This document shows positions 1-64,000 of a stretch of DNA of 64,000 bases, in pieces. The stretch spans positions 68,448,001 through 68,512,000 of the forward strand of contig NW_027361696.1 of assembly GCF_039654945.1 (NCBI RefSeq), in the 5' to 3' direction. Positions within the stretch are counted from its first letter, which is position 1. Every line of letters starts with the position of its first letter. The DNA comes from Dendrobates tinctorius. Taxonomy: Eukaryota. The notes below the pieces were generated by a model. The model did no database searches and was not told where the DNA came from. It saw only the letters and a list, made by a program, of their open reading frames with translations. Made by a program: the position numbers and the translations under genes.

Positions 1-236
1 CCCTCTTGTCTCCACCCCCCAAGTCCCATAAGTCTGGCTTGCTTAAAGAGACAGATCTAATCATTATACATTACATCATCCCCTTTTTTTTTTTTTTTTT
101 TACTATAAATAACCTATATTACTGATAAATGCAACAACATGAAAACGTCCAAAGAAATCATATGTACGTTTTGTCTTATTTGTTCAATTCCAAAACCAGA
201 GAAACAAACAAAAAAACAAAACAAACAAAACTGTAG

Positions 237-1586
237 TTACACTTCTTCAATGAGCCTCGATGGAGCTCTTCTCTCTCGTGTGGGATAACGTCTGGGCTCA
301 TTGAGAGGGTTCATTGTTGATGGACCAGCTACCTCTTGTTGGTCCTCTCCACCATCGGATACCAAATCTTCCACCAAAGAGAGTTCATTGTCATCATTCT
401 GCGGTATGACTTTAAAATATGAAGAATTTCGCGTTATGGAGTGTCCATCTCGTTCAGCTGTGATCATGCTGCCTTTCCTTTTAGTAACATAATATTTTGC
501 AGGACCATATACAGGTGAGGTCTTGTTGGTTGGTCTTTGACGTACCACCACGACATCCCCTCTTTCGATGGCACTTGACTGTGTCCTTCGCCTTCTGTCT
601 GCATAACGTTTCATGGCTTGTTTGTTGGAGAAATCTGTGGATCTCACTGAGGAGTCACTCGGTCGCGGATGGCTGGTCACATCAGGGAGACGTATACGCA
701 GGGTTCTGCTGAACATTAAATGAGCTGGAGCAGCATTAGTAGTGGAGTGTGGCGTATTGCGGTAATTACGCATGAATTTGTATAATGACTGTTTCAGTGG
801 GATGTGCTCCAGACTCGCTGCCTTGATACGTTTCCCCAGAGTGCGCATAAAACGTTCCACAATTCCATTGGCTTGCGGCCAGCAAGGTGTGATTTTCCTG
901 TGATTGAATCCCAAGTAGTCAGAAAATTGTGTAAACACATGTCCATTGAATGGAGGTCTATTGTCTGTTTTGACCACTCTTGGAATACCATATGCCGAGA
1001 AAATGTCGTCCAGCTCTGGTATGACATTATTAGCAGATGTTGAAGAGATAAATGAAATGACAGGGTATCGAGAATATTCATCAATTGTTACGAGAATGTA
1101 TTGGCCATTTGGCAATGGTCCATATATATCGACTGCCACTTCCTCCCAGACAGCAGTGGGTAACGGAGACATTTGTAATGGCTCTAAGTTTGATGATGGA
1201 GTGATTAATTGACAAGTAGAACAGCGTCTAATCTTTTCTTCCACCAAGTGATCCATATTTGGGAACCACACTTTTTCTCTGAGTAACTTCTTTGTGATAA
1301 CAATTCCTAAATGACCTTCATGTGCTATCTGTATGACTAAGTTACGCAAAGCCTTAGGTACAACTAGTTTGGTACCTCGAAGAATGAGGTGTTCTTCTGT
1401 GACTGATAATTCCTCACGTACGTTTGAGAATAGTTTTAACTCTTTCAGATCAATCTCAGAATCAGGAAATTTTTCCTTTTGAATTTCATGCCACCTTCGA
1501 TTTTGAATGATTTGTATTAGGGCACAGAGTGTCTTGTCTTTTGTTGTTTCATTTATAAATTGATCAAGAGAAAGTGCTTTTGGCAC
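237..1586 (-). CDS. Gypsy integrase (separated from RT/RNase H by a frameshift)
   Basis: HEGH...C..C zinc finger, DDE core (VAVDIYGP, KTDN, NGIVERF), GPY/F-like C-terminus. Confidence 0.9.
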   Translation of the reverse strand: MPKALSLDQFINETTKDKTLCALIQIIQNRRWHEIQKEKFPDSEIDLKELKLFSNVREELSVTEEHLILRGTKLVVPKALRNLVIQIAHEGHLGIVITKKLLREKVWFPNMDHLVEEKIRRCSTCQLITPSSNLEPLQMSPLPTAVWEEVAVDIYGPLPNGQYILVTIDEYSRYPVISFISSTSANNVIPELDDIFSAYGIPRVVKTDNRPPFNGHVFTQFSDYLGFNHRKITPCWPQANGIVERFMRTLGKRIKAASLEHIPLKQSLYKFMRNYRNTPHSTTNAAPAHLMFSRTLRIRLPDVTSHPRPSDSSVRSTDFSNKQAMKRYADRRRRTQSSAIERGDVVVVRQRPTNKTSPVYGPAKYYVTKRKGSMITAERDGHSITRNSSYFKVIPQNDDNELSLVEDLVSDGGEDQQEVAGPSTMNPLNEPRRYPTRERRAPSRLIEEV

Positions 1587-4184
1587 GGCATGATCTGAAC
1601 AAAACGTAGGTATTCTTCAATGGAGGAATGCATAGGTATATCATCATTAGTAGGGTGTCTTGAAAGATAATCAGCCGGATTGCTGTATTTTCCAGGTTTG
1701 TGAACAATTTTATAGTTGTAGTCCTGTAGACGTAGGCCCCATCGTTCAATTCGTGCAGGCATTTTAGCTCTGGGATTTCCAAAAATTGTAAGAAGTGCTT
1801 GATGATCTGTGACAATGGTGAAGGGAGCTCCATAGAGAAATAAGTGAAAGTGTTCACATCCCCAGACAACTGCCAAGCTTTCCTTTTCAGGTTGAGAATA
1901 TTTTCTTTCAGTGTTTGTTAAGCTCTTACTTGCATAAGAAATGATGTGAGGATTTTGATTGTTATCCTTGTACTGCGCTAGAATAGCACCCAGTCCCACG
2001 GGACTGGCGTCCACAATCAGTTCAGTTCGAAGAGCTGGATCAAAATAAGCCATAGTGGTTGTCGAGCAGAGTTCATTTTTAATTGTTTCAAAAGAGGCCT
2101 GACAGTCTTGAGACCATTGAAAAATACAACTTTGTTTTGTAAGTTCCCGTAGTGGATTGCTGATTGTTGAAAAATTCGGAATATATCTAGCACAGTAACT
2201 TGCCATTTCAAGGAAAGAACGCACTTCACTGGCATCCTGTGGAATTGAGGCTGTTCTGATAGCTTCCACTTTCTTGGGGTCTGGTTGTACTCCTTTTGCC
2301 GAGAAGATGTGACCATAGAATTCTAATGAACCCTTGTCAAACTCGCACTTCTCTTTGTTTAAAGTGAGTCCATTAGAAAGCAGGCATTCGAAGATAGCAT
2401 ATAGAGCATGATTATGCTCAGCTTGAGTTTTACCAAAAACCAATATGTCATCACTGTAATTAAAGGCATTTGGGATGTGTTGAATGACACTCCTTATTGC
2501 ATCCTGAAAAATTTCTGCTGCTGAGCAGACTCCAAAAGTCAATCTTTTGTATCTTCTGAGGCCCACATGGGTGGAAAATGTGGTCAAGTATCGGGACTCT
2601 GGACTCAGTTCTAATTGATGATATCCCTTATTGAGGTCGAGCTTTGAAAAGACGGTGGCTCCATTTAATAAATGAATGTCATCAATCGTAGGTGAGATAT
2701 GTCTTTCCCTCTGGATAGCGGTGTTGGGCAGGCGCATGTCAACACACAGTCTCACTTGATCAGGAGTCTTTGGTTTTGGAACTACCACAAGTGGAGAGAC
2801 CCACGGAGTGGGACCAGTAACAGTTTCAATAACGTCCTCATCCATGAGCAATTGGAGTTCCTTTTCTACCTTCTGTCTCAGGTGAAATGGAATACGCCTG
2901 TGAGGCTGGGCTACTGGACGAACATTGTCATCCACATGAAGGTGTACTTGAGAGTCCTTTAGTTTTCCCAAACCACTAAATAGGGAGGGAAAGCTGTTCA
3001 CCATAGTTTGTACATCCATATCCGCAGGGTCAGTTATGGTATGAATAATCTGGATGAGCCCTAGCTCCAAGGCAGTGTGATAGCTGAGAAGACAGCCTCC
3101 CGATCCTTGTAATGTGTGGAAAGTGGTTTTCTGCCTGTTTTCTTTATATCTAATTTCAGCATCAAATTGTCCCATTATAGCTAGAGGTGTTTTAGATCCA
3201 TAAGGAAAGATTTTAGTCTGCACTTGTTGTAAGACTGGCCTTGTTTTCAATTGTTCATATGTAGTGCCATCTATGATATCCACTGAAGCTCCTGTATCTA
3301 TTGTAAAGGTAATGTCAGTGTTGCAGATTGAGAGTGTAACACAGGGAGACTGTACTGAACCAGTGACAGAGGTAGTGAACACATAGTTCTCAGTCGCAGA
3401 CATTTCTTCTGTGTACTGATTTATCACTTTTACATCTGCAGATTTTGTCATAGGCAGCGGAGGCTTGTAGTGCGCTGACTTGCAAACAGCTGCAAAATGA
3501 TTCCATTTTCCACATTTACTGCAGGTTTGTCCCATAGCTGGACATTTGTTCTGGTGGTGAGGGAAATCCTGTCCACATCTATAACATTTCTTCTGTTTCT
3601 GGGCTTGTTTGTCTGGTAAATTTTTCTGTTTGAGATTATGCACATGTAATTTATCCCCATTCTCCGTTACGGTAGCCTGATGATCTGCTATTTCTATAGC
3701 ACGGGCCATTTTGAGAAAATTATGTAGAGAGATATCCTGCTGCAGAGCCTTACGCCTTAGGTTATTAGACGAGCAGGTGACAATTATTTGAGTTAGGATT
3801 TCATCATCTACATCTGTAAAGGCACATCCATGTGCTAACTCTTTCAGCCGTGTGACATAAGTGTCTATGGACTCTTCTGGAAGCTGCTTGGCAATCCTGA
3901 ATTTATATCTTTCATATCTGATGTTCTGTTTGGGGTTGAAGTAGCCAGTGAGAGCTTTAGTGCAGTTGCTGTATGTGTCTGTTTCTGCTGCAGGTAACGT
4001 ACTGTATATGTCATAGACTCCTGTGCCTGCACTGCAGGAGCAAAGCTCTCTTTCTTTTCTCCTCCTTTATGTCCATGGCTTCTAGGAAATTCTCAAATCT
4101 GTTTAGCCAATTTCTCCAGTTATGGGAGAGATTAATGACATCAGTCATATCAAACTGTGGGAATGTGTGCAAGTAGTCAGCCAT
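1553..4184 (-). pseudogene. Gypsy gag-protease-RT-RNase H, frameshifted near 4020
   Basis: ORF 4011-4241 gives the gag N-terminus (WRNWLNRFENFLEA). ORF 1553-3709 has CYRCG/CSKCG knuckles, IDTGAS, LDLNKGYHQ, YSDD and DASPVGLG. Confidence 0.9.
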
Positions 4185-5088: not shown

Positions 5089-6238
5089 GGCTGCACGATT
5101 ATTGGGAGATAAGCTAATTATGCAAATTGTCTCTTCAGAGAGGAAGAGGACTAGAACTCTAGTGCCATCTATTGGAAGTAGCAATCCTAAAAGTCAATGT
5201 CAACCTTTTAACAAGCCTTGTTACATGACTTAGGATAAAAGCGAAGCCAGAATCTCAATTTGCAGACACTGTGTTTCGGGGTACTGTTATGAATGGGAAA
5301 CCGAGGAGGAAAAACAAGACAACAAGCTAAGTCTTGGTAACTATGCAGATTGCAGATCCCTGATCTTAACCGCACAACTAGAAGCAGTCGTGGAGCGTTC
5401 CTACATTGGTCCTAGACGCCTCGTCACAACCGGAGAACTACATAAGCCTAAAGCAGGAGAAGAGGAAAACTAACTGCCCCAGAGCAGACCCCAAAGGAAA
5501 GACAGCCCCCCCACATGTATTGACGGTGAAGCAAGATGAAAATACAAACAAAGGCAGGAAAATAGGCTGAGCAAACGATGGGGCCCGGCTAACTAAAAAG
5601 GACAGAAAAGGAAAGACACTGTCTGCAATCTGCCAAAAACAACCTACAAAAATATTATCCAACACTTCTGATAGCAAAATTAACCCTGAAGTCACTAGAC
5701 TTCTAAACCTATATCAGCACTCTGAAATATTCTGAGACAGAGCAAAAAAGAGGCCAATCTAATAAGGAACAAAAAGCAGATTGGCAAATACTGATTAATA
5801 GGAGTGGAAATTCAGCATAGCCCCAGCAGGGGCAAGCTGATTACACAAAAAACTGAATTGACCAACAAGCGCAAGTGTGAACATTAGCAAAAAACAAACT
5901 TAACTTGAGAAGACTGGAAGAGAGTCCAGGACTTGAGAAGCAGACTGAATCACCAGCACCCGGATAGGGCATCGGCTGTCTTATATCCAGTCTGATACTC
6001 CAGAGATCCAATCGTTATCTTCCTCATCAGGTGGCAGATCACTACCACTTAAACCAACAGCACTACCTCCTGTCACCACCAGAGGGAGAACGGAAGGGGA
6101 ACTCTCAACTGGTGGAACAGAAAATGAGTTCATGACAGGGTACTGCCCCTCGTCAGTGCAAAGTGTAAGATCTGGTTTGGCTGTGAGAGATGTGTCTGAC
6201 CGATATCCAAGAAGTATCATTTCTCCTTGCAGAGAATT
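5089..6238 (-). mobile_element. Hammerhead-ribozyme repeat (326-bp retrozyme family), interrupted by a solo LTR
   Basis: 5089-5284 plus 6144-6238 align with 43768-44058. Rejoined minus strand reads CTGACGA-GGGG-cagta-CCCC-GAAACAC-A-GTGTC. Confidence 0.85.
5285..6137. mobile_element. Solo LTR (853 bp)
   Basis: Termini TGTTATGAA...TTCATGACA; 6-bp TSD GGGTAC at 5279-5284 and 6138-6143; the host repeat resumes exactly after it. Confidence 0.85.
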
Positions 6239-31731: not shown

Positions 31732-31860
31732 CTGCAAAGTTAATGAAAAAGTTAGTGTTAATTAAAATACTGTATTTAGTTCACATATGCTTTCCTCCTA
31801 GAGTCAAATTCATAGATCCATACTATATCTGGATTGTATGAGATTAGAAACAAAAAAAAA

Positions 31861-33598
31861 GTATTTTTACAGGATGAAAATGATGAAATGGTAAGACAGG
31901 ATGTTGAGAAGGCTGAACTTTTAAATTCCTATTTTGCATCTGTTTTCTCTCGGAAAGGAAATGCAACATCAACTGTTATTCACTGTCCTATTAAGGGAAT
32001 AGAAGAATCCAGGATATCTATAAACAGAAAGATAGTGAGGAAACACTTAGCTAACCTAAATGAATTCAAGTCTCCAGGTCCAGATGAATTACACCCCAGA
32101 GTACTAAAGGAGATAGCAGAAGAAATTTTTGAACCCCTCTCCATAATCTTTGAAAATTCTTGGAGAACAGGAGAAGTGCCAGAAGACTGGAGAAGAGCAA
32201 ATGTTGTTCCTATCTTCAAAAAGGGGAAGAAGGTGGACCCAGGCAACTATAGGCCGGTGAGTCTGACTTCTATACCAGGAAAGATCTTTGAACAAATTAT
32301 TAAACAACATGTATGTCAATACCTGGATAAGAATGAAGTGATTAAACAGAGTCAGCATGGGTTTGTAACTGATAAGTCATGTCAGACTAACTTAATTTCC
32401 TTCTATGACGGTATCACTGATTGGGTGGATCAAGGAAATGCTGTAGATATAGTATATCTTGACTTCAGCAAAGCATTTGACAAAGTCTCTCATACAATCC
32501 TTATTGAAAAAATGACTAAGTATGGAATGGACAAGGCAACTGTTAGGTGGATTCATAACTGGCTTAGTGATCGGACCCAAAGAGTGGTCGTAAATGGCTG
32601 CACATCCAGTTGGAAGAATGTCTCAAGTGGGGTACCACAGGGCTCTGTCCTGGGCCCTGTATTGTTCAACATCTTTATCAACGATTTAGATGAAGGAATT
32701 GAGGGTAAACTGATTAAATTTGCTGATGACACAAAGCTAGGAGGGATAGCTAATACTAGAGAGGAGAGAGAGATGATTCAAAAAGATTTAAATAAACTGG
32801 AGAAGTGGGCAGCAACTAACAGAATGGTTTTTAACAGGGAGAAATGCAAAGTACTACATCTGGGCAATAAAAATGAAAAAAGCATATATAGAATGGGAGA
32901 AATAGGGCTAAGTGACAGCACATGTGAAAAAGACTTGGGTATACTAATAGATCACAGACTGAATATGAGTCAACAGTGTGATGCAGCAGCAAAAAAGGCA
33001 AATGCAATTCTAGGATGTATTAACAGAAGCATACAGTCTAGATCACGTGAAGTCATTATTTCCCTCTACTCCTCTTTGGTCAGACCTCATCTGGAATATT
33101 GTGTCCAGTTTTGGGCACCACATTTTAAAAAAGACATCAACAAACTGGAGCAAGTTCAGAAAAGAGCGACCAGAATGGTGACCGGTCTGCAAACCCTGTC
33201 TTATGAGGAAAGGTTGCAGGATTTGGGAATGTTTAGTTTGCAAAAGAGAAGACTGAGAGGAGACTTAATAGCTGTCTACAAATATCTAAAGGGCTGTCAC
33301 ATTGTAGAAGGATCAACTTTATTCTCATTTGCACAAGGAAAGACTAGAAGCAATGGGATGAAACTGAATGGGAAGAGACACAGATTAGATATTAGAAAAA
33401 ACTTTTTGACAGTTAGAGTGATCAATGAGTGGAACAGGCTGCCACGAGAAGTGGTGAGTTCTCCTTCAATGGAAGTCTTCAAACAGAGGCTGGACAGACA
33501 TCTGACTGGGATGATTTAGCGAATCCTGCTTTGAGCAGGGGGTTGGACCAGATGGCCCAGGAGGTCCCTTCCAACTCTACGATTCTATGATTCTATGA
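31861..33598 (+). mobile_element. CR1 LINE, 5'-truncated, intact RT frame (ORF 31834-33519), in intron 2 of the saxo3-like gene
   Basis: [33 protein letters not shown]; 3' tail (ATTCTATG)n. Confidence 0.96.
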
Positions 33599-39165: not shown

Positions 39166-41366
39166 AACTAGAGGTGGAAGACCTGTGAAGACTCAGACGT
39201 CAAGGTTAGATTTCAGAAAGGCAGATTTTAAGGGATTCAGAAAGAGAATTGGAGGGATCCAATGGCTGGATATCCTTAAAGACAAAAATGTCCAGGAAGG
39301 ATGGGAAATCTTGAAAAATGAAATTCTCAATGCACAGTTGTTAACAATTCCGAAAAGAGGGAAGAATAGGAAGCATTTAAGGAAACCAGGATGGATGAAC
39401 ACAGAACTTAAGCACATGCTAAAAAGGAAGAAAAAAATGTTTATAAAATGGAAAGAGGGAGGCATATCTAAAGAAGAATATAATGCTGTCTGCAGAACCT
39501 GCAGGGCACAAATCAGATTATCTAAAGCTGAAAATGAACTGAGGCTTGCAAGAGATGTCAAAAGCAATAATAAAGGATTTTGGGGATATGTCAAAAGTAA
39601 AAGAAAAGTCAAAGATGCTATAGTATTTTTACAGGATGAAAATGATGAAATGGTAAGACAGGATGTTAAGAAGGCTGAACTTTTAAATTCCTATTTTGCA
39701 TCTGTTTTCTCTCAGAAAGGAAATGCAACATCAACTGTTATTCACTGTCCTATTAAGGGAATAGAAGAATCCAGGATATCTATAAACAGAAAGATAGTGA
39801 GGAAACACTTAGCTAACCTAAATGAATTCAAGTCTCCAGGTCCAGATGAATTACACCCCAGAGTACTAAAGGAGATAGCAGAAGAAATTTTTGAACCCCT
39901 CTCCATAATCTTTGAAAATTCTTGGAGAACAGGAGAAGTGCCAGAAGACTGGAGAAGAGCAAATGTTGTTCCTATCTTCAAAAAGGGGAAGAAGGTGGAC
40001 CCAGGCAACTATAGGCCGGTGAGTCTGACTTCTATACCAGGAAAGATCTTTGAACAAATTATTAAACAACATGTATGTCAATACCTGGATAAGAATGAAG
40101 TGATTAAACAGAGTCAGCATGGGTTTGTAACTGATAAGTCATGTCAGACTAACTTAATTTCCTTCTATGATGGTATCACTGATTGGGTGGATCAAGGAAA
40201 TGCTGTAGATATAGTATATCTTGACTTCAGCAAAGCATTTGACAAAGTCTCTCATACAATCCTTATTGAAAAAATGACTAAGTATGGAATGGACAAGGCA
40301 ACTGTTAGGTGGATTCATAACTGGCTTAGTGATCGGACCCAAAGAGTGGTCGTAAATGGCTGCACATCCAGTTGGAAGAATGTCTCAAGTGGGGTACCAC
40401 AGGGCTCTGTCCTGGGCCCTGTATTGTTCAACATCTTTATCAACGATTTAGATGAAGGAATTGAGGGTAAACTGATTAAATTTGCTGATGACACAAAGCT
40501 AGGAGGGATAGCTAATACTAGAGAGGAGAGAGAGAGGATTCAAAAAGATTTAAATAAACTGGAGAAGTGGGCAGCAACTAACAGAATGGTTTTTAACAGG
40601 GAGAAATGCAAAGTACTACATCTGGGCAATAAAAATGAAAAAAGCATATATAGAATGGGAGGAATAGGGCTAAGTGACAGCACATGTGAAAAAGACTTGG
40701 GTATACTAATAGATCACAGACTGAATATGAGTCAACAGTGTGATGCAGCAGCAAAAAAGGCAAATGCAATTCTAGGATGTATTAACAGAAGCATACAGTC
40801 TAGATCACGTGAAGTCATTATTTCCCTCTACTCCTCTTTGGTCAGACCTCATCTGGAATATTGTGTCCAGTTTTGGGCACCACATTTTAAAAAAGACATC
40901 AACAAACTGGAGCAAGTTCAGAAAAGAGCGACCAGAATGGTGACCGGTCTGCAAACCCTGTCTTATGAGGAAAGGTTGCAGGATTTGGGAATGTTTAGTT
41001 TGCAAAAGAGAAGACTGAGAGGAGACTTAATAGCTGTCTACAAATATCTAAAGGGCTGTCACATTGTAGAAGGATCAACTTTATTCTCATTTGCACAAGG
41101 AAAGACTAGAAGCAATGGGATGAAACTGAATGGGAGGAGACACAGATTAGATATTAGAAAAAACTTTTTGACAGTTAGAGTGATCAATGAGTGGAACAAG
41201 CTGCCACGAGAAGTGGTGAGTTCTCCTTCAATGGAAGTCTTCAAACAGAGGCTGGACAGACATCTGACTGGGATGATTTAGCGAATCCTGCTTTGAGCAG
41301 GGGGTTGGACCAGATGGCCCAGGAGGTCCCTTCCAACTCTACGATTCTATGATTCTATGATTCTAT
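39166..41366 (+). mobile_element. CR1 LINE, 5'-truncated, open ORF2 39185-41281
   Basis: Near-identical to the copies at 31861 and 45411; (ATTCTATG)n tail. Confidence 0.96.
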
Positions 41367-43698: not shown

Positions 43699-44095
43699 TA
43701 TCCAAGAAGTATCATTTCTCCTTGTGGAGAATGACATGCTAAGCATGTCGAGGTGAGCAGACTTAAAGCTGCAATGCTCCTCTGGGAAACATGCTAATTA
43801 TACAAATTGTCTCTTCAGAGAGGAAGAGGACTAGAACTCTAGTGCCACCTATTGGAGGTAGCAATCCTAAAAGTCAATGTTGACCCTTTAACGAGCCTAG
43901 TTACATGACTTAGGATAAAAGCTAAGCCAGAATCTCCATTTGCAGACACTGTGTTTCGGGGTACTGCCCCTCATCAGTGCACAGTGGGAGATCTGGTTTG
44001 GCTGTGAGAGAGGCGTCTGACCAATATCCAAGAAGTATCATTTCTCCTTGCGGAGAATGACATGCAAAGCATGTCGAGGTGAGGAGACTTAAAGC
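43699..44095 (-). mobile_element. Retrozyme-like repeat, 326-bp unit plus 71-bp terminal redundancy
   Basis: 43699-43769 is repeated at 44025-44095; contains an intact hammerhead core. Confidence 0.88.
43927..43996 (-). ncRNA. Type I hammerhead ribozyme
   Basis: UGCA-CUGAUGA-GGGG-caguA-CCCC-GAA-ACAC-A-GUGU-C^UGCA; extended stem I ccagaucucc/ggagauucugg; predicted cleavage between 43945 and 43944. Confidence 0.9.
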
Positions 44096-45124: not shown

Positions 45125-45410
45125 ATTCTTTTCAACCATGTTATAAAGGTTATTGGATTTTTACCTATCCTATTGTGAATCTCCTTCCGCCATTCATGTC
45201 TTGATAGTCCTTGCCCTGTAATGCATCCTGGGAGATGTAGTTTTTTTTATGTTATTTAATTGTATTTATTTTAATTATATTTTTTCCTGTCTACATGTGC
45301 TCTATCACAGTAGAGGCATCTGGACAAAGTTTTTTCTAATTTTAGATCTCTGTTTTATTTATTCATTGCTCCTCCATCTTTTGTCTGTAATTTTCAGATC
45401 CTGCCTCCTT

Positions 45411-46782
45411 GAAGAAGGTGGACCCAGGCAACTATAGGCCGGTGAGTCTGACTTCTATACCAGGAAAGATCTTTGAACAAATTATTAAACAACATGTATG
45501 TCAGTACCTGGATAAGAATGAAGTGATTAAACAGAATCAGCATGGGTTTGTAACTAATAAGTCATGTCAGACTAACTTAATTTCCTTCTATGATGGAATC
45601 ACTGATTGGGTGGATCAAGGAAATGCTGTAGATATAGTATATCTTGACTTCAGCAAAGCATTTGACAAAGTATCTCATACAATCCTTATTGAAAAAATGA
45701 CTAAGTATGGAATGGACAAGGCAACTGTTAGGTGGATTCATAACTGGCTTAGTGATCGGACCCAAAGAGTGGTCGTAAATGGCTGCACATCCAGTTGGAA
45801 GAATCTCTTAAGTGGGGTACCACAGGGCTCTGTCCTGGGCCCTGTATTGTTCAACATCTTTATCAACGATTTAGATGAAGGAATTGAGGGTAAACTGATT
45901 AAATTTGCTGATGACGCAAAGCTAGGAGGGATAGCTAATACTAGAGAAGAGAGAGAGAGGATTCAAAAAGATATAAATAAACTGGAGCAGTGGGCAGCAA
46001 CAAACAGAATAGTTTTTAACAGGGAAAAATGCAAAGTACTACATCTGGGCAATAAAAATGAAAAAAGCATATACAGAATGGGAGGAATAGGGCTAAGTGA
46101 CAGCACATGTGAAAAAGACTTGGGCATACTAATAGATCACAGACTGAATATGAGTCAACAGTGTGATGCAGCAGCAAAAAAGGCAAATGCAATTCTAGGA
46201 TGTATTAACAGAAGCATACAGTCTAGATCACGTGAAATCATTATTTCCCTCTACTCCTCTTTGGTCAGACCTCATCTGGAATACTGTGTCCAGTTTTGGG
46301 CACCACATTTTAAAAAAGACATCAACAAACTGGAGCAAGTTCAGAAAAGAGCGACCAGAATGGTGACCGGTCTGCAAACCCTGTCTTATGAGGAAAGGTT
46401 GCAGGATTTGGGAATGTTTAGTTTGCAAAAGAGAAGACTGAGAGGAGACTTAATAGCTGTCTACAAATATCTAAAGGGCTGTCACATTGTAGAAGGATCA
46501 ACTTTATTCTCATTTGCACAAGGAAAGACTAGAAGCAATGGGATGAAACTGAATGGGAGGAGACACAGATTAGATATTAGAAAAAACTTTTTGACAGTTA
46601 GAGTGATCAATGAGTGGAACAAGCTGCCACGAGAAGTGGTGAGTTCTCCTTCAATGGAAGTCTTCAAACAGAGGCTGGACAGACATCTGACTGGGATGAT
46701 TTAGCGAATCCTGCTTTGAGCAGGGGGTTGGACCAGATGGCCCAGGAGGTCCCTTCCAACTCTACGATTCTATGATTCTATG
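45411..46782 (+). mobile_element. CR1 LINE, 5'-truncated, open RT frame 45409-46704
   Basis: Same family as the other two CR1 copies; (ATTCTATG)n tail. Confidence 0.96.
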
Positions 46783-47493
46783 GTGCCTGAAAAGAAGCTG
46801 CCTTATAATTGTGAATGGGAGCCTGAGCTGCAGGAGAAATACTGTAACACTTTGAACTGGAATGAGGTGGGGGGGGCGGGGGCGCTGGACAAACTATTGA
46901 GGCTGCCATGCCACTTCGGAATTTCGAAGCCCACCAGCCTCATATAGGAGAAATGGTCATGCATGTGTCTGTGAAAGATATGGAGACTCGCCAGCCAGCA
47001 ACTGCCAAAGCCTAAATTTCCCTGTAGCGCCCCCATAGAATAAGTGAAGTATTACATAATTTGCCAAAAAATCAATTTAGCTGCATTGCCCCCGCAAGAT
47101 AATTGAAGTATTACATGAATTGTACCAAAAAAAATAATTTCCCTGCAAGATAAATAAAATATTATATAGTTTGCACAGAAATCAATAAATTGTTTATTCA
47201 ATGTGTGGATGTTTCAGGTCCTCCAGAGTAAGCTGTGAAGATGAGGATGAATGAACTCATGGAGATCAACATCCAACACTGCGGAGACACCATCACGTGT
47301 TTCTCAACACAGTGATTCTAGAGCACTGCCCCCATCCCTTATGGGAAATATGCAAAACATGCAAAACAGAAGCCGCGGAGACACCATCACATGTTTCTCA
47401 ACGCAAGCAATGACCAGCCAGGTCTTTGCCCGGGAAGGAACAACCACGGGAAAGGCAGTCTCCAATGAAGGAAACCACCTATGCCAAAACATG

Positions 47494-47553
47494 GTATCCA
47501 TTCACAGACAGCTGTTTCGGGGTATTGCCCCTCATCAGTGTGGAGTAGGAAAC
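47494..47553 (-). ncRNA. Type I hammerhead ribozyme
   Basis: CACA-CUGAUGA-GGGG-caaua-CCCC-GAA-ACAG-CUGU-C^UGUG; predicted cleavage between 47507 and 47506. Confidence 0.9.
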
Positions 47554-47844
47554 TGGCTGGTAGGAGCAATGCCTAGTAAAAGACTGTGAAGATGAGGATG
47601 AATGAACTCATGGAGATCAACATCCAACACTGCGGAGACACCATCACGTGTTTCTCAACACAGTGATTCTAGAGCACTGCCCCCATCCCTTATGGGAAAT
47701 ATGCAAAACATGCAAAACAGAAGCCGCGGAGACACCATCACATGTTTCTCAACGCAAGCAATGACCAGCCAGGTCTTTGCCCGGGAAGGAACAACCACGG
47801 GAAAGGCAGTCTCCAATGAAGGAAACCACCTATGCCAAAACATG

Positions 47845-47904
47845 GTATCCATTCACAGACAGCTGTTTCGGGGTATTGCCCCTCATCAGTGTGGAGTAGG
47901 AAAC
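47845..47904 (-). ncRNA. Type I hammerhead ribozyme (second unit)
   Basis: Identical to the copy 351 nt away; predicted cleavage between 47858 and 47857. Confidence 0.9.
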
Positions 47905-48404
47905 TGGCTGGTAGGAGCAATGCCTAGTAAAAGACTGTGAAGATGAGGATGAATGAACTCATGGAGATCAACATCCAACACTGCGGAGACACCATCACGT
48001 GTTTCTCAACGCAGTGATTCTAGAGCACTGCCCCATCCCTTATGGGAAATATGCAAAACAGAGTAAGCTGGCCATACTCATTGGATAGCCATCTCTCCTG
48101 ACACGCCCATACACAGTAATGCTCAGCTTAACTTATCTCCCCGCTGAACAAAAAGATTGGGTAATTGAACTCCAATCTCCTGGTCCTCCTGTTCTCAACA
48201 TAAACCGTCAGGGGACAGTTCGGATACCCACATACACATCAGATGATCAGATGATCAGCCGATCCCGACGTATTTGGCAAGTCTGGCCAGTTTTTATACG
48301 ATGTGTATGGGGTCTTAATGAGTAACCATCATCTCAGTTTTTATGTCATATATCAATAGTACACATGAAAATGAGAAACTTTGTCATATATCTTATCAGA
48401 GAAA

Positions 48405-51120
48405 TTATTATTATTGTGCATTTAATAAACATGTGTAAGACAAGGGACACGCAAGTACATAAGGAGAGGGGACCCTGCCCGCAAGGGCTCACAGTCTACA
48501 GGGATGGGTGAGGATACAGTAAGAGAGGGGAGAGCAGGTCTTTCTGTGGTTCAGTAGACCGAGGATCATTGCAGGCTGTATTCTTGTCGGAACAGGTGGG
48601 TCTTCAGGTTCTTCTTCAAGGTTTCCGTTGATGGTGAGAGTCTGATGTGTTGCGGCAGGGAGTTCCAGAGTATGGGGGAAGCACGGGAGAAGTCTTGTAT
48701 GTGGTTGTGGGAAAAAGAGATAAGGGGGGAGTAGAGAAGGAGATCTTGAGATGATCGAAGATGCGTGCGGGTAGGTACCTAGAGACCATGTCACAGATGT
48801 ATGGAGGAGACAGGTTGTGGATGGCTTTGTATGTCATGGTTAGGGTTTTGAATTGTAGCCTCTGGACAATAGGAAGCCAGTGAAGGGCCTGGCATAGGGG
48901 GGAGGCTGGGGAATAGCGGGGAGACAGGTGGATTAGCCGGGCAGCAGAGTGTAGGATGGACTGGAGTGGTGCCAGAGTGCTAGAGGGGAGGCCAGAGAGT
49001 AGAAGGTTGCAGTAGTCAAGGCGGGAGATAAGAGCATGCACTAGTGTTTTTGTGGTTTTGTGGTTGAGGAATGAGCGGATCCGGGAAATATTTTTGAGTT
49101 TCAGGCGGCAGGAGGAGGCGAGGGCCTGGATATGTGGTTTGAAAGAGCGCAGAGTCAAGGATCACCCCAAGGCACCGAGCGTGTCGGACTGGGGAAAGAG
49201 AGCAGCCATTGACATTGATGGATAGGTCTGGTGGAGGGGTAGAGTGAGATGGGGAAAGATGATGAATTCCGTTTTGTCCATGTTCAGTTTAAGAAAGCGA
49301 GCAGAGAAGAAGGCTGAGATAGCAGACAGACATTGTGGGATTTCAGTCAGTAAGGAGGCGAGGTCGGGTCCAGATAGGTAGATCTGCGTGTCATCGTCAT
49401 AGAGGTGATACTGCAAACCGTGGGATTCTATGAGCTGTCAAAAAGCCGAAGGTATAGATGGAGAATAGTAGGGGTCCTAGGACAGAGCCTTGGGGAACAC
49501 CAACAGACAGGGGCCGAGATGAGGAGGTGGTGTGTGAGAGGGAGACACTAAATGTTCGGTCTGTTAGGTATGATGAGATCCAGGATAGGGCCAAGTCTGT
49601 GATGCCAAGAGATGAGAGTCTGTAGCAGGAGGGAATGGTCTACGGTGTCGAAGGCAGAGAACAGGTCCAGGAGAAGGCGGACAGAGTAGTGTCGCTTGCT
49701 CTTGGCGGTTAGTAAGTCGTTAGTGACTTTAGTTAGGGCAGTTTCAGTTGAGTGATGTGGTCGGAAGCCAGATTGTAACCGGTCAAAGAGGGAACAGGAG
49801 GAGAGGTGAGAGGACAGTTCAAGATATACATGCTGTTCCAGTAGTTTTGAGGCGTAAGGGAGAAGAGATATTGGGCGATAGTTAGACACAGAGGATTGGT
49901 CAAGGGAGGGCTTTTTGAGGATGGGTGTGATTGAGGCATGTTTGAAGGATGAGAGAAAGATACCATTTGTAAGTGAAAGGTTGAAAAGGTGTGTTAGAGA
50001 TGGGATGAGGACTGTGGCCAAGTTAGGGATGAGGTGAGACGGGAGTGGGTCGAGGGCACAAGTGGTGAGGTGTGATCTTGACAGAAGGGTGGAGAGCTGA
50101 TCTTCTGTCATGGTGGAGAAGCTGGCTTTTGCAGAACAGGGCTGAGCGGCTAAGAGGGGCATTGGGGGCTGCGGGCCAAAGTTTTGTCTGATTGTGTCGA
50201 TCTTCTGCTTAAGGAAGGAGGCAAAGTCTTCAGCAGAATTGAGGGGAGGGGGAGGAGGTGTTGTGGGACGGAGTAGAGAATTGAAAGTGTTGAAGAGCTG
50301 TTTAGGGTTGTGAGACAGGGAGAATATGAGAGATGCGAAGTAAGTTTGTTTTGCAGCAGAGAGCGTGGACTTAAAGCTGACAAGGGACTGCTTGTATGCG
50401 TTGAAGTGCTCAGTAGAATGGGTTCTCTTCCATCTCCGCTCAGCGACCCTGGAAACCCGTCTCAGTTCTTTGGTCAGGCTGGTCAGCCAGGGCTGCCTGT
50501 TGATTGTTCGAGTTTTGCTCTGCGTGAGGGGGGCAGCCGAATCGAGTGTTGCTGTTATTATGGTGTTATAAAAAGTGGCAGCAGCATCTGTGTCATGAAG
50601 GGAAGCTATGTCTGTAAGAGGGAGAAGGGACTCAGACAGTGATTGTAAATTGAGGTGTTTGAGATTCCTGCGAGGGTGAGCGAGTTTATGGAGCGGGGGT
50701 TGCGCAGTAGGAGAGGAGAGGGAAGAGAATGTCAGTAGGTTGTGGTCAGACAGATGTGTTGAGGAGGGCCAGGATTTGGGGATACATCGCCAGCAATGAG
50801 GAGTAGTAGACGGAGCATTAGAAGGTGGGAGCAGGATAGGACATGATGTGGCCATGTGTGTCTGGAGAAAAAGGATTTATATGTGGAGGAACAGTTGTGA
50901 GGAGAAGGTTAGGTGGCTGGGGAGAATGGAGAGGGAGATGAATAGTTCCTTACTAGGAGGGGGGATTGAAGGAGTTAGGGAGAAATAGAGTAGTATGGGG
51001 GTGATCGTAAAAAGAAGACGAAACATTGTTGTGGTGTTATAGGCTGTTACCTTGCAGTCAAATTCCAGTCCAATTCTAGTTTAATTCAGAGTACTTAGAA
51101 ATCAGTACTTTGAAATAAGA
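48405..51120 (-). mobile_element. L2 LINE, frameshifted, endonuclease largely deleted
   Basis: RT motifs [41 protein letters not shown] and HWLP in several frames; 5' boundary approximate. Confidence 0.9.
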
Positions 51121-63423: not shown

Positions 63424-63845
63424 ATATGCAAATTGCCTCTTCAGAAAGAAAGAGGACTTTTACGCTACAGCGTCACCTATTGGTAGTAGCGATCCTACAA
63501 GTCACAATCAACCCTTTAACGAGTCTTGTAATATGACTTAGGATACAAGCCAAGCGATCCTACAAGTCACAATCAACCCTTTAACGAGTCTTGTAATATG
63601 ACTTAGGATACAAGCCAAATACAATGGCTTGTATCCTAAGTCATATTACAAGACTCGTTAAAGGGTTGATTGTGACTTGTAGGATCGCTACTACCAATAG
63701 GTGGCGCTGTAGAGTAAAAGTCCTCTTTCTTTCTGAAGAGGCAATTTGCATATTATTTTCCCAGAGGAGCATTGCACGGCAAATAAGCCTCCTTACCTTG
63801 ACAAGCCACAGCTGGCATGTCACTCTCCGCAAGGAGAAACCTTAC
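63424..63845. repeat. Fold-back (inverted) copy of a diverged member of the 326-bp retrozyme family, without the ribozyme
   Basis: Arms 63424-63617 and 63625-63753, 7-nt spacer, 65-bp tandem duplication (63488, 63553); homologous to 43710-43925. Confidence 0.85.
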
Positions 63846-64000
63846 CTCTTAGACCACAAATAAGATAGAAATGTACTTGAAATTCATGTCTGGAGTCTAT
63901 TTTTTATGCTGGCATACTGCATCTGAAAGATGGGACAAATTCAATAAAAATTGCATGCCTCTTAGTGAATTTTGCACATCTTCCTCCAGTATGCCTTGGA

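What the first reader, a model, noticed from the sequence alone, without database searches (positions are those of the whole stretch)
47224..48070. Young tandem retrozyme: two intact hammerheads 351 nt apart, flanked by a TSD
Seen: 2.36 near-identical 351-bp units. Each full unit has, on the minus strand, a full hammerhead core (CUGAUGA, 4-bp stem II, GAAA, GUC cleavage triplet) closed by stem I. Stem III is the loopless palindrome ACAGCUGU. The array is flanked by CAGAGTAAGCTG (7-12 bp, allowing for microhomology). Established: non-LTR retrozymes and newt satellite 2 are tandem type I hammerhead repeats that yield monomeric, often circular, RNA; palindromic stem III favours dimeric cleavage. 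Inference: this is a recent insertion made by rolling-circle reverse transcription of a 351-nt non-coding circular RNA, using another element's RT. The class is known; this frog family may be undescribed.
Basis: partly seen in the sequence, partly recalled or inferred. Interest (0 to 1): 0.9.

Follow-up and report, generated by a model that had tools for sequence, protein, structure and literature searches.

The report
Young frog hammerhead retrozyme insertion
This is a recent, non-coding jumping-repeat insertion made of 2.36 copies of a 351-base unit that carries a small self-cutting (hammerhead) RNA motif; a related frog still has the empty site, but this kind of element is already well described in amphibians, so it is a clean example, not a discovery.

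Summary
A 351-bp unit repeated 2.36 times occupies 47233-48060. Units 1 and 2 are 100% identical. Each has a complete type I hammerhead on the minus strand, cutting at 47507|47506 and 47858|47857. The 12-mer CAGAGTAAGCTG flanks the array and occurs nowhere else in 64 kb.

New evidence: a contig from a related organism (flanks ~97% identical) runs straight across the site without the 834-835 bp. So this is a true insertion with a 7-12 bp target-site duplication, made after the two organisms split.

The family is very high-copy and is present in three organisms. Isolated motifs are predicted to fold as a double hammerhead, not as an active monomer, as in newt and axolotl repeats.

This is a non-LTR retrozyme, a class already described in amphibians (Cervera & de la Pena 2020; Li et al. 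2026, 57 Xenopus families). This scan has already flagged the same ~352-nt family at other places in this genome (132 hammerhead/retrozyme notes).

Not shown: transcription, cleavage, circles, the partner RT. Rfam scores the motif below its threshold (22.1 vs 34 bits). This copy has a C.A mismatch in helix I. The simple "one circle, rolling-circle RT" step is unproven and mildly disfavoured by two details. Low novelty.

The parts
47224..47235 (.). Left copy of the target-site duplication CAGAGTAAGCTG. Its last 3 nt (CTG) also match the unit (microhomology).
   Evidence: The empty site in organism B keeps a single copy (X5 record 31).
47236..48058 (-). Inserted DNA proper (823 nt, all unit sequence; no extra 'tail', no poly(A)). 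The RNA-sense strand is minus: 5' end at about 48058-48060, 3' end at about 47233-47236.
47233..47583 (-). Unit 1 (351 bp), 100% identical to unit 2.
47584..47934 (-). Unit 2 (351 bp).
47935..48060 (-). Partial unit 3 (126 nt; in RNA sense the 5'-truncated first unit). It has G at 48011 (the family-majority letter at a CpG) where units 1 and 2 have A, and a C4 run instead of C5.
   Evidence: 47309 A>G is the majority letter in the family.
47490..47556 (-). Hammerhead 1 (type I): helix I CACA/UGUG plus distal UCC/GGA, core CUGAUGA, helix II GGGG/CCCC with loop CAAUA, GAAA, helix III ACAGCUGU, cut after C47507.
   Evidence: Rfam RF00163 covers 47544-47501 at 22.1 bits, E 0.0012, full model, no non-canonical pair.
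47841..47907 (-). Hammerhead 2, identical to hammerhead 1, cut after C47858.
47507..47857 (-). The one complete 351-nt monomer RNA that double cleavage of a transcript of this locus would release. It is predicted to be highly self-paired as a circle.
   Evidence: Linear MFE -126.4 kcal/mol, z -3.5. Circular MFE -125.0, z -4.4, 67% paired, GC 48.7%.
47350..47367 (.). Two tandem octamer-like motifs, ATGCAAAAC x2 (sense strand TTTTGCAT), repeated at 47701-47718. A possible internal promoter element; inference only.
   Evidence: The axolotl Ax353 construct also has CTGTTTTGCATA. Newt satellite 2 uses an snRNA-type promoter (Coats et al. 1994, as cited in PMC2220036).
48059..48070 (.). Right copy of the target-site duplication. 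Its first 2 nt (CA) also match the unit.

Best explanation
The stretch is one insertion of a very abundant amphibian non-LTR retrozyme. This is a non-coding 351-nt repeat whose minus-strand RNA carries a canonical metazoan type I hammerhead.

Shown: the 823-835 bp are absent from the orthologous site of a related organism. The site is duplicated by 7-12 bp. The insert is a 5'-truncated head-to-tail 2.36-mer with 2-3 nt microhomologies at both joints and no poly(A).

Inferred: a borrowed reverse transcriptase, most likely of a Penelope-like element, nicked the + strand after ...AAGCTG. It primed on the retrozyme RNA about 80 nt upstream of a hammerhead cut site and copied more than two unit lengths of a circular or concatemeric template. 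The second strand was then joined 12 nt upstream.

If the locus is transcribed on the minus strand, the two hammerheads can pair through the palindromic helix III (ACAGCUGU) into a double hammerhead. This would cut at 47858|47857 and 47507|47506 and release one 351-nt RNA. A host tRNA ligase (RtcB type) could circularise that RNA, and in the circle the hammerhead is held in an inactive alternative hairpin.
For: Array and unit identity.

Hammerhead: all invariant core positions are present with the correct topology. The Rfam type I model is matched end to end, E 0.0012 on the 81-nt stretch. Two helix I pairs change in a compensatory way (A-U to G-C, C-G to U-A) between this hammerhead and the one of the unrelated 326-bp family at 43927-43997.

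Dimer dependence: the free MFE of one 67-nt motif is not the catalytic fold (-14.9 vs -9.5 kcal/mol). The free MFE of two motifs is exactly the double hammerhead with an 8-bp helix III (-34.9 vs -29.8). This matches published behaviour of amphibian hammerheads (PMC7229834, PMC4209133).

Insertion: X5 record 31 joins 47230 directly to 48065, with flanks ~97% identical. Source-run contigs cover both filled junctions with no differences. The 12-mer is unique to the two junctions.

Family: summed contig depth over the array is about 3-7 x 10^5 against about 5 in the unique flanks, and the family is present in organisms A, B and C.

Class features: no meaningful ORF, GC 48.7% and a strongly self-paired circle, as described for metazoan retrozymes.

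The life-cycle model is the published one (PMC7761336). The Penelope link is from Li et al. 2026.
Against: No direct evidence of transcription, cleavage or circles. All available runs are contigs, their RNA status is a guess, and no ends or strands can be read.

Rfam scores the motif below gathering (22.1 vs 34 bits) and finds nothing in the default whole-window scan.

Both units carry A at helix I position 1.5 (47502 T on +) where about 99.9% of family depth has G. This shortens proximal helix I from 6 to 4 bp.

In the full 828-nt transcript the double hammerhead is not in the predicted ensemble and costs +11.9 kcal/mol.

Only 1 of 9 Xenopus retrozyme dimers cleaved in vitro.

No Penelope-like RT or GIY-YIG domain is detectable in the window, and the 30-40 bp 'tail' often seen at Penelope insertions is absent.
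Confidence: 0.85

Rival explanations
1. Same element, different route to the multimer. The template was not a monomeric circle. It was either a linear concatemeric transcript of a heterogeneous donor array, or two RNAs joined by template switching as in Penelope pseudo-LTR formation. Reverse transcription started at a defined 3' terminus.
For: Unit 3 differs from the identical units 1 and 2 at 2 of 126 sites. If both changes arose after insertion, the chance that both fall in unit 3 is (126/828)^2 = 0.023 (note 3). Two independent copies of the 326-bp family end within 2 nt of each other (43699 and the arm ending at 63853). That end is 80 nt before the next cut, and this array's 3' end is 77-80 nt before its next cut. 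Penelope elements and their non-autonomous derivatives typically insert as 5'-truncated partial tandems (PMC8557442).
Against: Only one family-1 copy and two family-2 copies could be examined. A circle copied from a specific initiation site would give the same fixed end. Gene conversion between the two full units could erase their differences.
Confidence: 0.4
2. The insertion was originally a 1.36-mer. The second full unit arose later by unequal crossing-over or replication slippage, so the perfect identity of units 1 and 2 dates the duplication, not the insertion.
For: Units 1 and 2 share a derived CpG-to-CpA change (47309/47660 A) that unit 3 and the family majority lack. The neighbouring family-2 copy is a 1.2-mer. 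Li et al. propose local amplification of retrozyme arrays by unequal crossover.
Against: It needs three events. No 1.36-copy allele was seen, though contigs cannot resolve this. Multimeric insertions are common for this class.
Confidence: 0.25
3. A dead-on-arrival copy. It inserted by retrotransposition, but its hammerheads do not cleave and the locus makes no 351-nt RNA.
For: C.A mismatch in helix I relative to the family majority. The Rfam score is below gathering. The double hammerhead is disfavoured by 11.9 kcal/mol in the full transcript. 8 of 9 tested Xenopus dimers were inactive in vitro. No promoter has been shown.
Against: All invariant core nucleotides and all three helices are intact in both units. 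If the template carried the same A, it was itself processed or at least mobilised. Amphibian hammerheads with weak helices do cleave as dimers.
Confidence: 0.35
4. DNA-level origin: a piece of extrachromosomal circular satellite DNA integrated by end joining, with no RNA intermediate.
For: Tandem repeats shed circular DNA. The joints show only 2-3 nt microhomology.
Against: A 7-12 bp duplication of the target indicates a staggered endonuclease cut, as in target-primed reverse transcription. The family is dispersed at very high copy with duplications at other loci according to earlier scan notes. The class is documented as RNA-mediated.
Confidence: 0.04

Closest known systems
Axolotl non-LTR retrozymes Rtz_353 / Rtz_331 (Cervera & de la Pena 2020, PMC7229834)
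   Same: Unit length is about 330-353 nt and arrays are tandem. The type I hammerhead has a 4-bp helix II and a palindromic, loopless-looking helix III (Ax353 ACACGUGU, Ax330 ACAUGU, here ACAGCUGU). Cleavage is dimer-dependent. GC is below 50%, the predicted circle is self-paired, and copy number is very high. There is an octamer-like TTTTGCAT in the sense strand.
   Different: By eye there is no sequence similarity outside the hammerhead and the octamer-like motif (not aligned by tool). The triplet here is GUC, against GUA in Ax353. Here helix II is four clean G-C pairs, whereas HHR_Amex2 has a U.U at its base. RNA circles were demonstrated for the axolotl, not here.
Xenopus non-LTR retrozyme families (Li, Clavereau & Pollet 2026, bioRxiv 10.64898/2026.07.22.740005)
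   Same: Frog tandem repeats averaging about 316 bp with a type I hammerhead in each unit. This copy meets their operational definition of an 'active' retrozyme: at least 2 consecutive units with a complete hammerhead and MFE below -5 kcal/mol.
   Different: Identity with any of their 57 families could not be checked, because the consensus sequences are not held and the organism is coded. They report exclusion from genes and kinship with Penelope pseudo-LTRs, neither tested here. They give no empty-site evidence for single insertions.
Newt satellite 2 (Epstein & Gall 1987; Forster et al. 1988; cited)
   Same: A roughly 330-bp amphibian repeat with a type I hammerhead that has a weak helix III and is active as a dimer. 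Monomeric and multimeric transcripts are made. It has an internal snRNA-type promoter (Coats et al. 1994).
   Different: It is known mainly as long satellite arrays. This is a dispersed 2.36-mer with a target-site duplication. Sequence homology was not tested.
Penelope-like element min-hammerheads in pseudo-LTRs (Cervera & de la Pena 2014, PMC4209133; Lunse et al. 2017)
   Same: Type I, dimer-dependent, in direct repeats created at insertion. The insertion architecture is a 5'-truncated partial tandem.
   Different: PLE min-hammerheads have a helix II of 7-8 bp with a bulged base, a helix I of 4-5 bp and no loop-loop contacts. This one is the canonical metazoan form (helix II 4 bp, helix I with an internal loop). 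There is no RT/GIY-YIG ORF and no 30-40 bp tail.

Membership tests
Hammerhead ribozyme, type I (Rfam RF00163) | Invariant core CUGANGA ... GAAA ... UH with G10.1-C11.1 and A15.1-U16.1 | tested here: met
   CUGAUGA / G-C at the base of helix II / GAAA / A-U / GUC in both units.
Hammerhead ribozyme, type I (Rfam RF00163) | Three helices around the core, with helix I open (5' and 3' ends in helix I) | tested here: met
   The Rfam alignment covers model positions 1-45 of 45 with no non-canonical pair. Helix I is 4 bp plus a distal 3 bp, helix II 4 bp, helix III 2 bp as a hairpin or 8 bp as a dimer.
Hammerhead ribozyme, type I (Rfam RF00163) | Score at or above Rfam's gathering threshold (34 bits) | tested here: not met
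   No hit in the whole-window gathering scan. 22.1 bits, E 0.0012, when only 81 nt are searched. In the 1.1-kb search only a mis-permuted Hammerhead_3 hit of 16 bits appeared.
Hammerhead ribozyme, type I (Rfam RF00163) | Helices supported by compensatory changes | tested here: met
   Helix I pairs 1.3/2.3 (A-U vs G-C) and 1.4/2.4 (C-G vs U-A) covary between this hammerhead and the one at 43927-43997. This rests on only two distinct sequences.
Hammerhead ribozyme, type I (Rfam RF00163) | Site-specific self-cleavage | not testable with these tools
   Needs in vitro transcription of a monomer and a dimer.
Metazoan non-LTR retrozyme (Cervera & de la Pena 2020) | Tandem repeats of about 150-450 bp, each unit with a type I hammerhead; no LTR, PBS, PPT or ORF | tested here: met
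   351-bp units, with a hammerhead in both full units. The longest ORF is 112 aa with no Pfam match, and it is broken by unit 3's 1-nt deletion.
Metazoan non-LTR retrozyme (Cervera & de la Pena 2020) | Dispersed copies flanked by target-site duplications longer than 4 bp | tested here: met
   12-bp (minimum 7) duplication. Empty site in organism B. High-copy family in three organisms.
Metazoan non-LTR retrozyme (Cervera & de la Pena 2020) | GC below 50% and a stable, highly self-paired predicted circular RNA | tested here: met
   GC 48.7%; circular MFE -125.0 kcal/mol, z -4.4, 67% paired.
Metazoan non-LTR retrozyme (Cervera & de la Pena 2020) | Expressed as linear and circular monomer RNAs | tested here: inconclusive
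   Runs guessed to be RNA (X15, X18) hold family contigs, but they are contigs of uncertain type with no ends or strand.
'Active' non-LTR retrozyme as defined by Li et al. 2026 | [quoted passage not shown] | tested here: met
   Two identical hammerheads; MFE -14.9 kcal/mol for the 67-nt motif.
Non-autonomous derivative of a Penelope-like element | Sequence kinship with the pseudo-LTR or 3' end of an autonomous PLE of the same genome | not tested
   No PLE RT or GIY-YIG was found in this window. Neither Repbase nor the rest of the genome is available.
Non-autonomous derivative of a Penelope-like element | PLE-style insertion: 5'-truncated partial tandem, often with a 30-40 bp tail or an inverted arm | tested here: inconclusive
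   A 5'-truncated head-to-tail multimer is present. The tail and inverted arm are absent. The family-2 copy at 63425-63853 does show inverted arms.

The most novel reading that the evidence does not exclude
Both hammerhead repeat families in this window end, in RNA sense, at a fixed point 77-80 nt upstream of the next cleavage site (45-47 nt upstream of the CUGAUGA box). If this holds genome-wide, frog retrozymes are not copied from arbitrary points on a circle. Instead the partner reverse transcriptase starts at a specific site, which would define the recognition element shared with the autonomous (Penelope-like) partner. This empty-site-verified young copy would then mark a family that is still mobile.
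Probability: 0.3. Interest if true: 0.5.

Novelty: new member of a known kind. Interest (0 to 1): 0.3.

Why it matters
Retrozymes are the animal and plant counterparts of viroid-like circular RNAs. How the animal ones are mobilised is still inferred rather than shown. This copy pairs a filled site with an empty site in related frogs, has exact junctions and two intact hammerheads, and is therefore a convenient natural substrate. It can be used to test dimer cleavage, circle formation, which reverse transcriptase copies the RNA, and where copying starts. It does not change what is known. It adds one well-documented insertion event, plus a testable hint that the 3' end is fixed.

Tried and rejected
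1. Rfam at gathering thresholds on the whole window found nothing. The 1.1-kb permissive search gave only a mis-permuted Hammerhead_3 hit.

2. Looking for more family copies:
- BLAST of the unit against the window found only the array itself and the hammerhead of family 2.
- One exact-pattern scan of metagenome contigs returned a single unrelated prokaryotic intergenic hammerhead with the same helix II (L001).
- The search of earlier findings by sequence was blank.

3. Identifying the organism by exact lookup of the 1098-aa LINE ORF: not on record.

4. Comparing with published Xenopus consensus sequences: the held supplement of Li et al. is only an oligo order form.

5. Reading Coats et al. 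1994 on the newt promoter: not held.

6. A coding reading of the 112-aa plus-strand ORF (the unit is exactly 117 codons) was rejected. There is no Pfam match, and the frame is broken in unit 3 and by family indels.

7. A neighbouring Penelope-like element as the source of the RT was rejected. The flanking RT ORFs show only generic RVT_1. One element has an APE endonuclease (a LINE) and none has GIY-YIG. The LINE that ends at 46782 is separated from the array by unique DNA that is continuous in the empty-site contig.

8. RNA ends and strand could not be read, because every run is held as contigs.

Full report
**1. What is there**

Tandem Repeats Finder reports a single array at 47233-48060 with period 351, 2.4 copies and 99% matches.
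- Direct comparison shows units 1 (47233-47583) and 2 (47584-47934) are identical at all 351 positions.
- The 126-nt partial unit 3 (47935-48060) differs from them by one substitution (G at 48011 against A at 47309/47660) and one deleted C in a C5 run.
- The 12-mer CAGAGTAAGCTG lies at 47224-47235 and 48059-48070 and occurs nowhere else in the 64-kb window. None is expected in dinucleotide shuffles.
- Its last three bases on the left (CTG) and first two on the right (CA) also match the unit.

**2. The hammerhead**

On the minus strand each full unit reads CCACA-CUGAUGA-GGGG-caaua-CCCC-GAAA-CAGCUGUC|UGUG.
- All invariant positions are present: C3-A9, G12-A14, A15.1-U16.1, C17, G10.1-C11.1.
- The cut sites are 47507|47506 and 47858|47857.

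Rfam gives mixed support.
- It finds nothing at gathering thresholds in the whole window.
- In a 1.1-kb permissive search it finds only a mis-permuted Hammerhead_3 hit of 16 bits.
- Given only 81 nt, the type I model RF00163 aligns end to end (1-45 of 45, no non-canonical pair) at 22.1 bits, E 0.0012. This is still below the 34-bit gathering score.
- The Rfam consensus itself models helix III as a loopless 4+4 palindrome.

A third hammerhead of the same build lies at 43927-43997 (-) inside an unrelated 326-bp repeat. Between the two, helix I pairs 1.3/2.3 and 1.4/2.4 change in a compensatory way (A-U to G-C, C-G to U-A), while the core, helix II and the 3' side of loop 1 are conserved.

The motif fits the published definition of the canonical metazoan type I hammerhead: helix II of 4 bp, and helix III of 1-2 bp capped by a 2-4 nt palindromic loop. 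It does not fit the Penelope min-hammerhead, which has a helix II of 7-8 bp and a bulged base (PMC4209133).

**3. Monomer versus dimer**

For the 67-nt motif alone:
- The free minimum is a non-catalytic hairpin (-14.9 kcal/mol). The hammerhead fold reaches only -9.5.
- For two copies, the unconstrained minimum is exactly the double hammerhead, with an 8-bp intermolecular helix III and swapped helices I (-34.9 against 2 x -14.9).
- This reproduces what is known for newt and axolotl hammerheads (PMC7229834).

Two caveats apply.
- Both units carry A at helix I position 1.5 (47502 T on the + strand), where about 99.9% of family depth has G. Proximal helix I is therefore 4 bp instead of 6.
- In the full 828-nt transcript of the locus, the double hammerhead is absent from the predicted ensemble and costs +11.9 kcal/mol. 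Cleavage, if it occurs, would be co-transcriptional or assisted.
- Li et al. saw cleavage for only 1 of 9 Xenopus dimers.

**4. The processed monomer**

The 351-nt RNA between the two cuts (47857 to 47507, minus strand) folds far better than shuffles.
- Linear: z -3.5.
- Circular: -125.0 kcal/mol, z -4.4, 67% paired, GC 48.7%.
- In the circle, the hammerhead core sits in the inactive alternative hairpin.
- The plus strand folds about as well (z -3.4), as expected for a self-complementary sequence.

The unit is non-coding. Its longest ORF (112 aa, plus strand) has no Pfam match and is broken by unit 3's deletion and by indels common in the family.

**5. It is an insertion: the empty site**

Public runs were held only as contigs. 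I laid four of them on 46500-48800.
- In organism B (run X5), a 1280-nt contig (record 31, depth 10) covers 46781-47230 and continues without a break at 48065-48381.
- It has 14 and 11 differing letters in the two pieces, so the flanks are about 97% identical.
- It skips 834 bp. The offset between the two copies of the 12-mer is 835 bp. So the empty site holds the 12-mer once, give or take one A in the AA run or the placement of the alignment.
- In the likely source run (X1), contigs with no differences cover both filled junctions (46759-47260 and 48033-48381). They stop 27 nt inside the array, as contigs do at high-copy repeats.

The 823 nt between the duplications are all unit sequence. There is no poly(A), no extra tail and no inverted arm. 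The array lies in low-depth unique DNA between two high-copy repeats. The LINE to its left ends at 46782 and is unrelated to it.

**6. The family**

- Summed contig depth over the array is 3-7 x 10^5 in X1 against about 5 in the unique flanks. This is a crude indicator, but it points to tens of thousands of unit equivalents.
- Contigs of at least 85% identity are present in organisms A, B and C.
- No well-supported alternative letter falls in the hammerhead core or helix III (47507-47538) among the rows shown. Several fall elsewhere: 47309, 47415, 47428, 47453, 47502, 47559.
- Earlier notes of this scan describe the same ~352/353-nt hammerhead family with target-site duplications at other loci of this genome. 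In all, 132 notes mention hammerhead retrozymes.

**7. Mechanism**

Shown:
- A staggered target duplication.
- 2-3 nt microhomology at both joints.
- 5' truncation (in RNA sense the element starts with the last 126 nt of a unit).
- A head-to-tail multimer.
- Absence from a related organism.

Together these are the marks of target-primed reverse transcription. The hammerhead strand is the RNA sense, so the first nick was on the + strand after ...AAGCTG. The primer paired with CAG in the RNA, and the cDNA ran from 47236 towards 48058.

Inferred:
- The enzyme came from another element. Penelope-like elements are the published candidates.
- None is detectable in this window by Pfam.

**8. Circle or not**

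Two details pull the other way.

First, the unit differences.
- A single circle gives identical units at birth.
- If the two differences arose later, the chance that both hit the 126-nt unit 3 and none hit the 702 nt of units 1 and 2 is (126/828)^2 = 0.023.
- Units 1 and 2 share a derived CpG-to-CpA change, while unit 3 keeps the family-majority G.
- A heterogeneous concatemeric template, a template switch, or a later duplication of one unit would each explain this.

Second, the position of the 3' end.
- The insertion ends are not at the cleavage site. The 3' end is 271-274 nt after a cut, that is 77-80 nt before the next one.
- In the 326-bp family, two independent copies (43699, and the inverted arm ending at 63853) end within 2 nt of each other, 80 nt before the next cut.
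- In both families this end lies 45-47 nt upstream of CUGAUGA.
- This suggests a defined terminus or initiation site. That is expected if retrozymes are non-autonomous Penelope derivatives, and it is compatible with a circle only if copying starts at a specific place.
- The sample is tiny: one copy of one family and two of the other.

**9. Comparison and verdict**

The element matches axolotl Rtz_353 and Rtz_331 in several respects:
- size;
- hammerhead architecture, including the palindromic helix III (ACACGUGU and ACAUGU there);
- GC content;
- predicted structure;
- a sense-strand octamer-like TTTTGCAT.

By eye there is no further sequence similarity. It meets Li et al.'s operational definition of an active non-LTR retrozyme.

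It is a new, well-documented member of a known kind, and possibly of a family already catalogued.

Noticed in passing
window 43699-44095 (hammerhead 43927-43997, minus strand): A second, unrelated hammerhead repeat family (326-bp unit, present as a 1.2-mer; 43699-43769 repeats at 44025-44095 at 96%). Its type I hammerhead is nearly the same but has a long helix I (10 bp distal stem) and helix III ACACAGUGU. No clear target-site duplication was found.
   Followed up: partly
window 5103-5286 and 6138-6237: Another family-2 copy, split inside helix II of its hammerhead by an ~851-bp A-rich unrelated insert. The insert is flanked by an 8-bp duplication, GGGTACTG (5279-5286 and 6138-6145).
   Followed up: partly
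window 63425-63853: Family-2 sequence arranged as two head-to-head inverted arms (63425-63618 and 63627-63853) with a perfect 65-bp tandem duplication (63488-63618). Both arms stop about 18 nt downstream of where the hammerhead cut would be and lack the ribozyme. This is a Penelope-style inverted-arm insertion. It carries a perfect octamer ATGCAAAT at 63427-63434.
   Followed up: partly
window 47281-47311 vs 47375-47405 (and the same in unit 2): Each 351-bp unit contains an internal 31-nt direct repeat (CGGAGACACCATCAC.TGTTTCTCAAC.CA, 93.5% identical), plus the 9-nt tandem ATGCAAAAC x2. The unit itself therefore grew by internal duplications.
   Followed up: no
window 45409-46782: The 3' part of an extremely high-copy LINE-like element (RT ORF 45409-46704, + strand). 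Its 3' end is at 46782, where hundreds of contigs in every run diverge. Similar RT ORFs lie at 31834-33519 and 39185-41281.
   Followed up: partly
L001 1540-1610 (metagenome contig Ga0315284_10168994): An intergenic hammerhead-like motif in a prokaryotic or phage-like contig. It shares the exact CUGAUGA-GGGGCAGUACCCC-GAAAC stretch with the frog family-2 hammerhead. This looks like convergence in helix II, not homology.
   Followed up: no
window 1-3709 (minus strand): An LTR-retrotransposon pol: RT, RNase H, and integrase with an H2C2 zinc finger (ORFs 1553-3709 and 237-1586).
   Followed up: no
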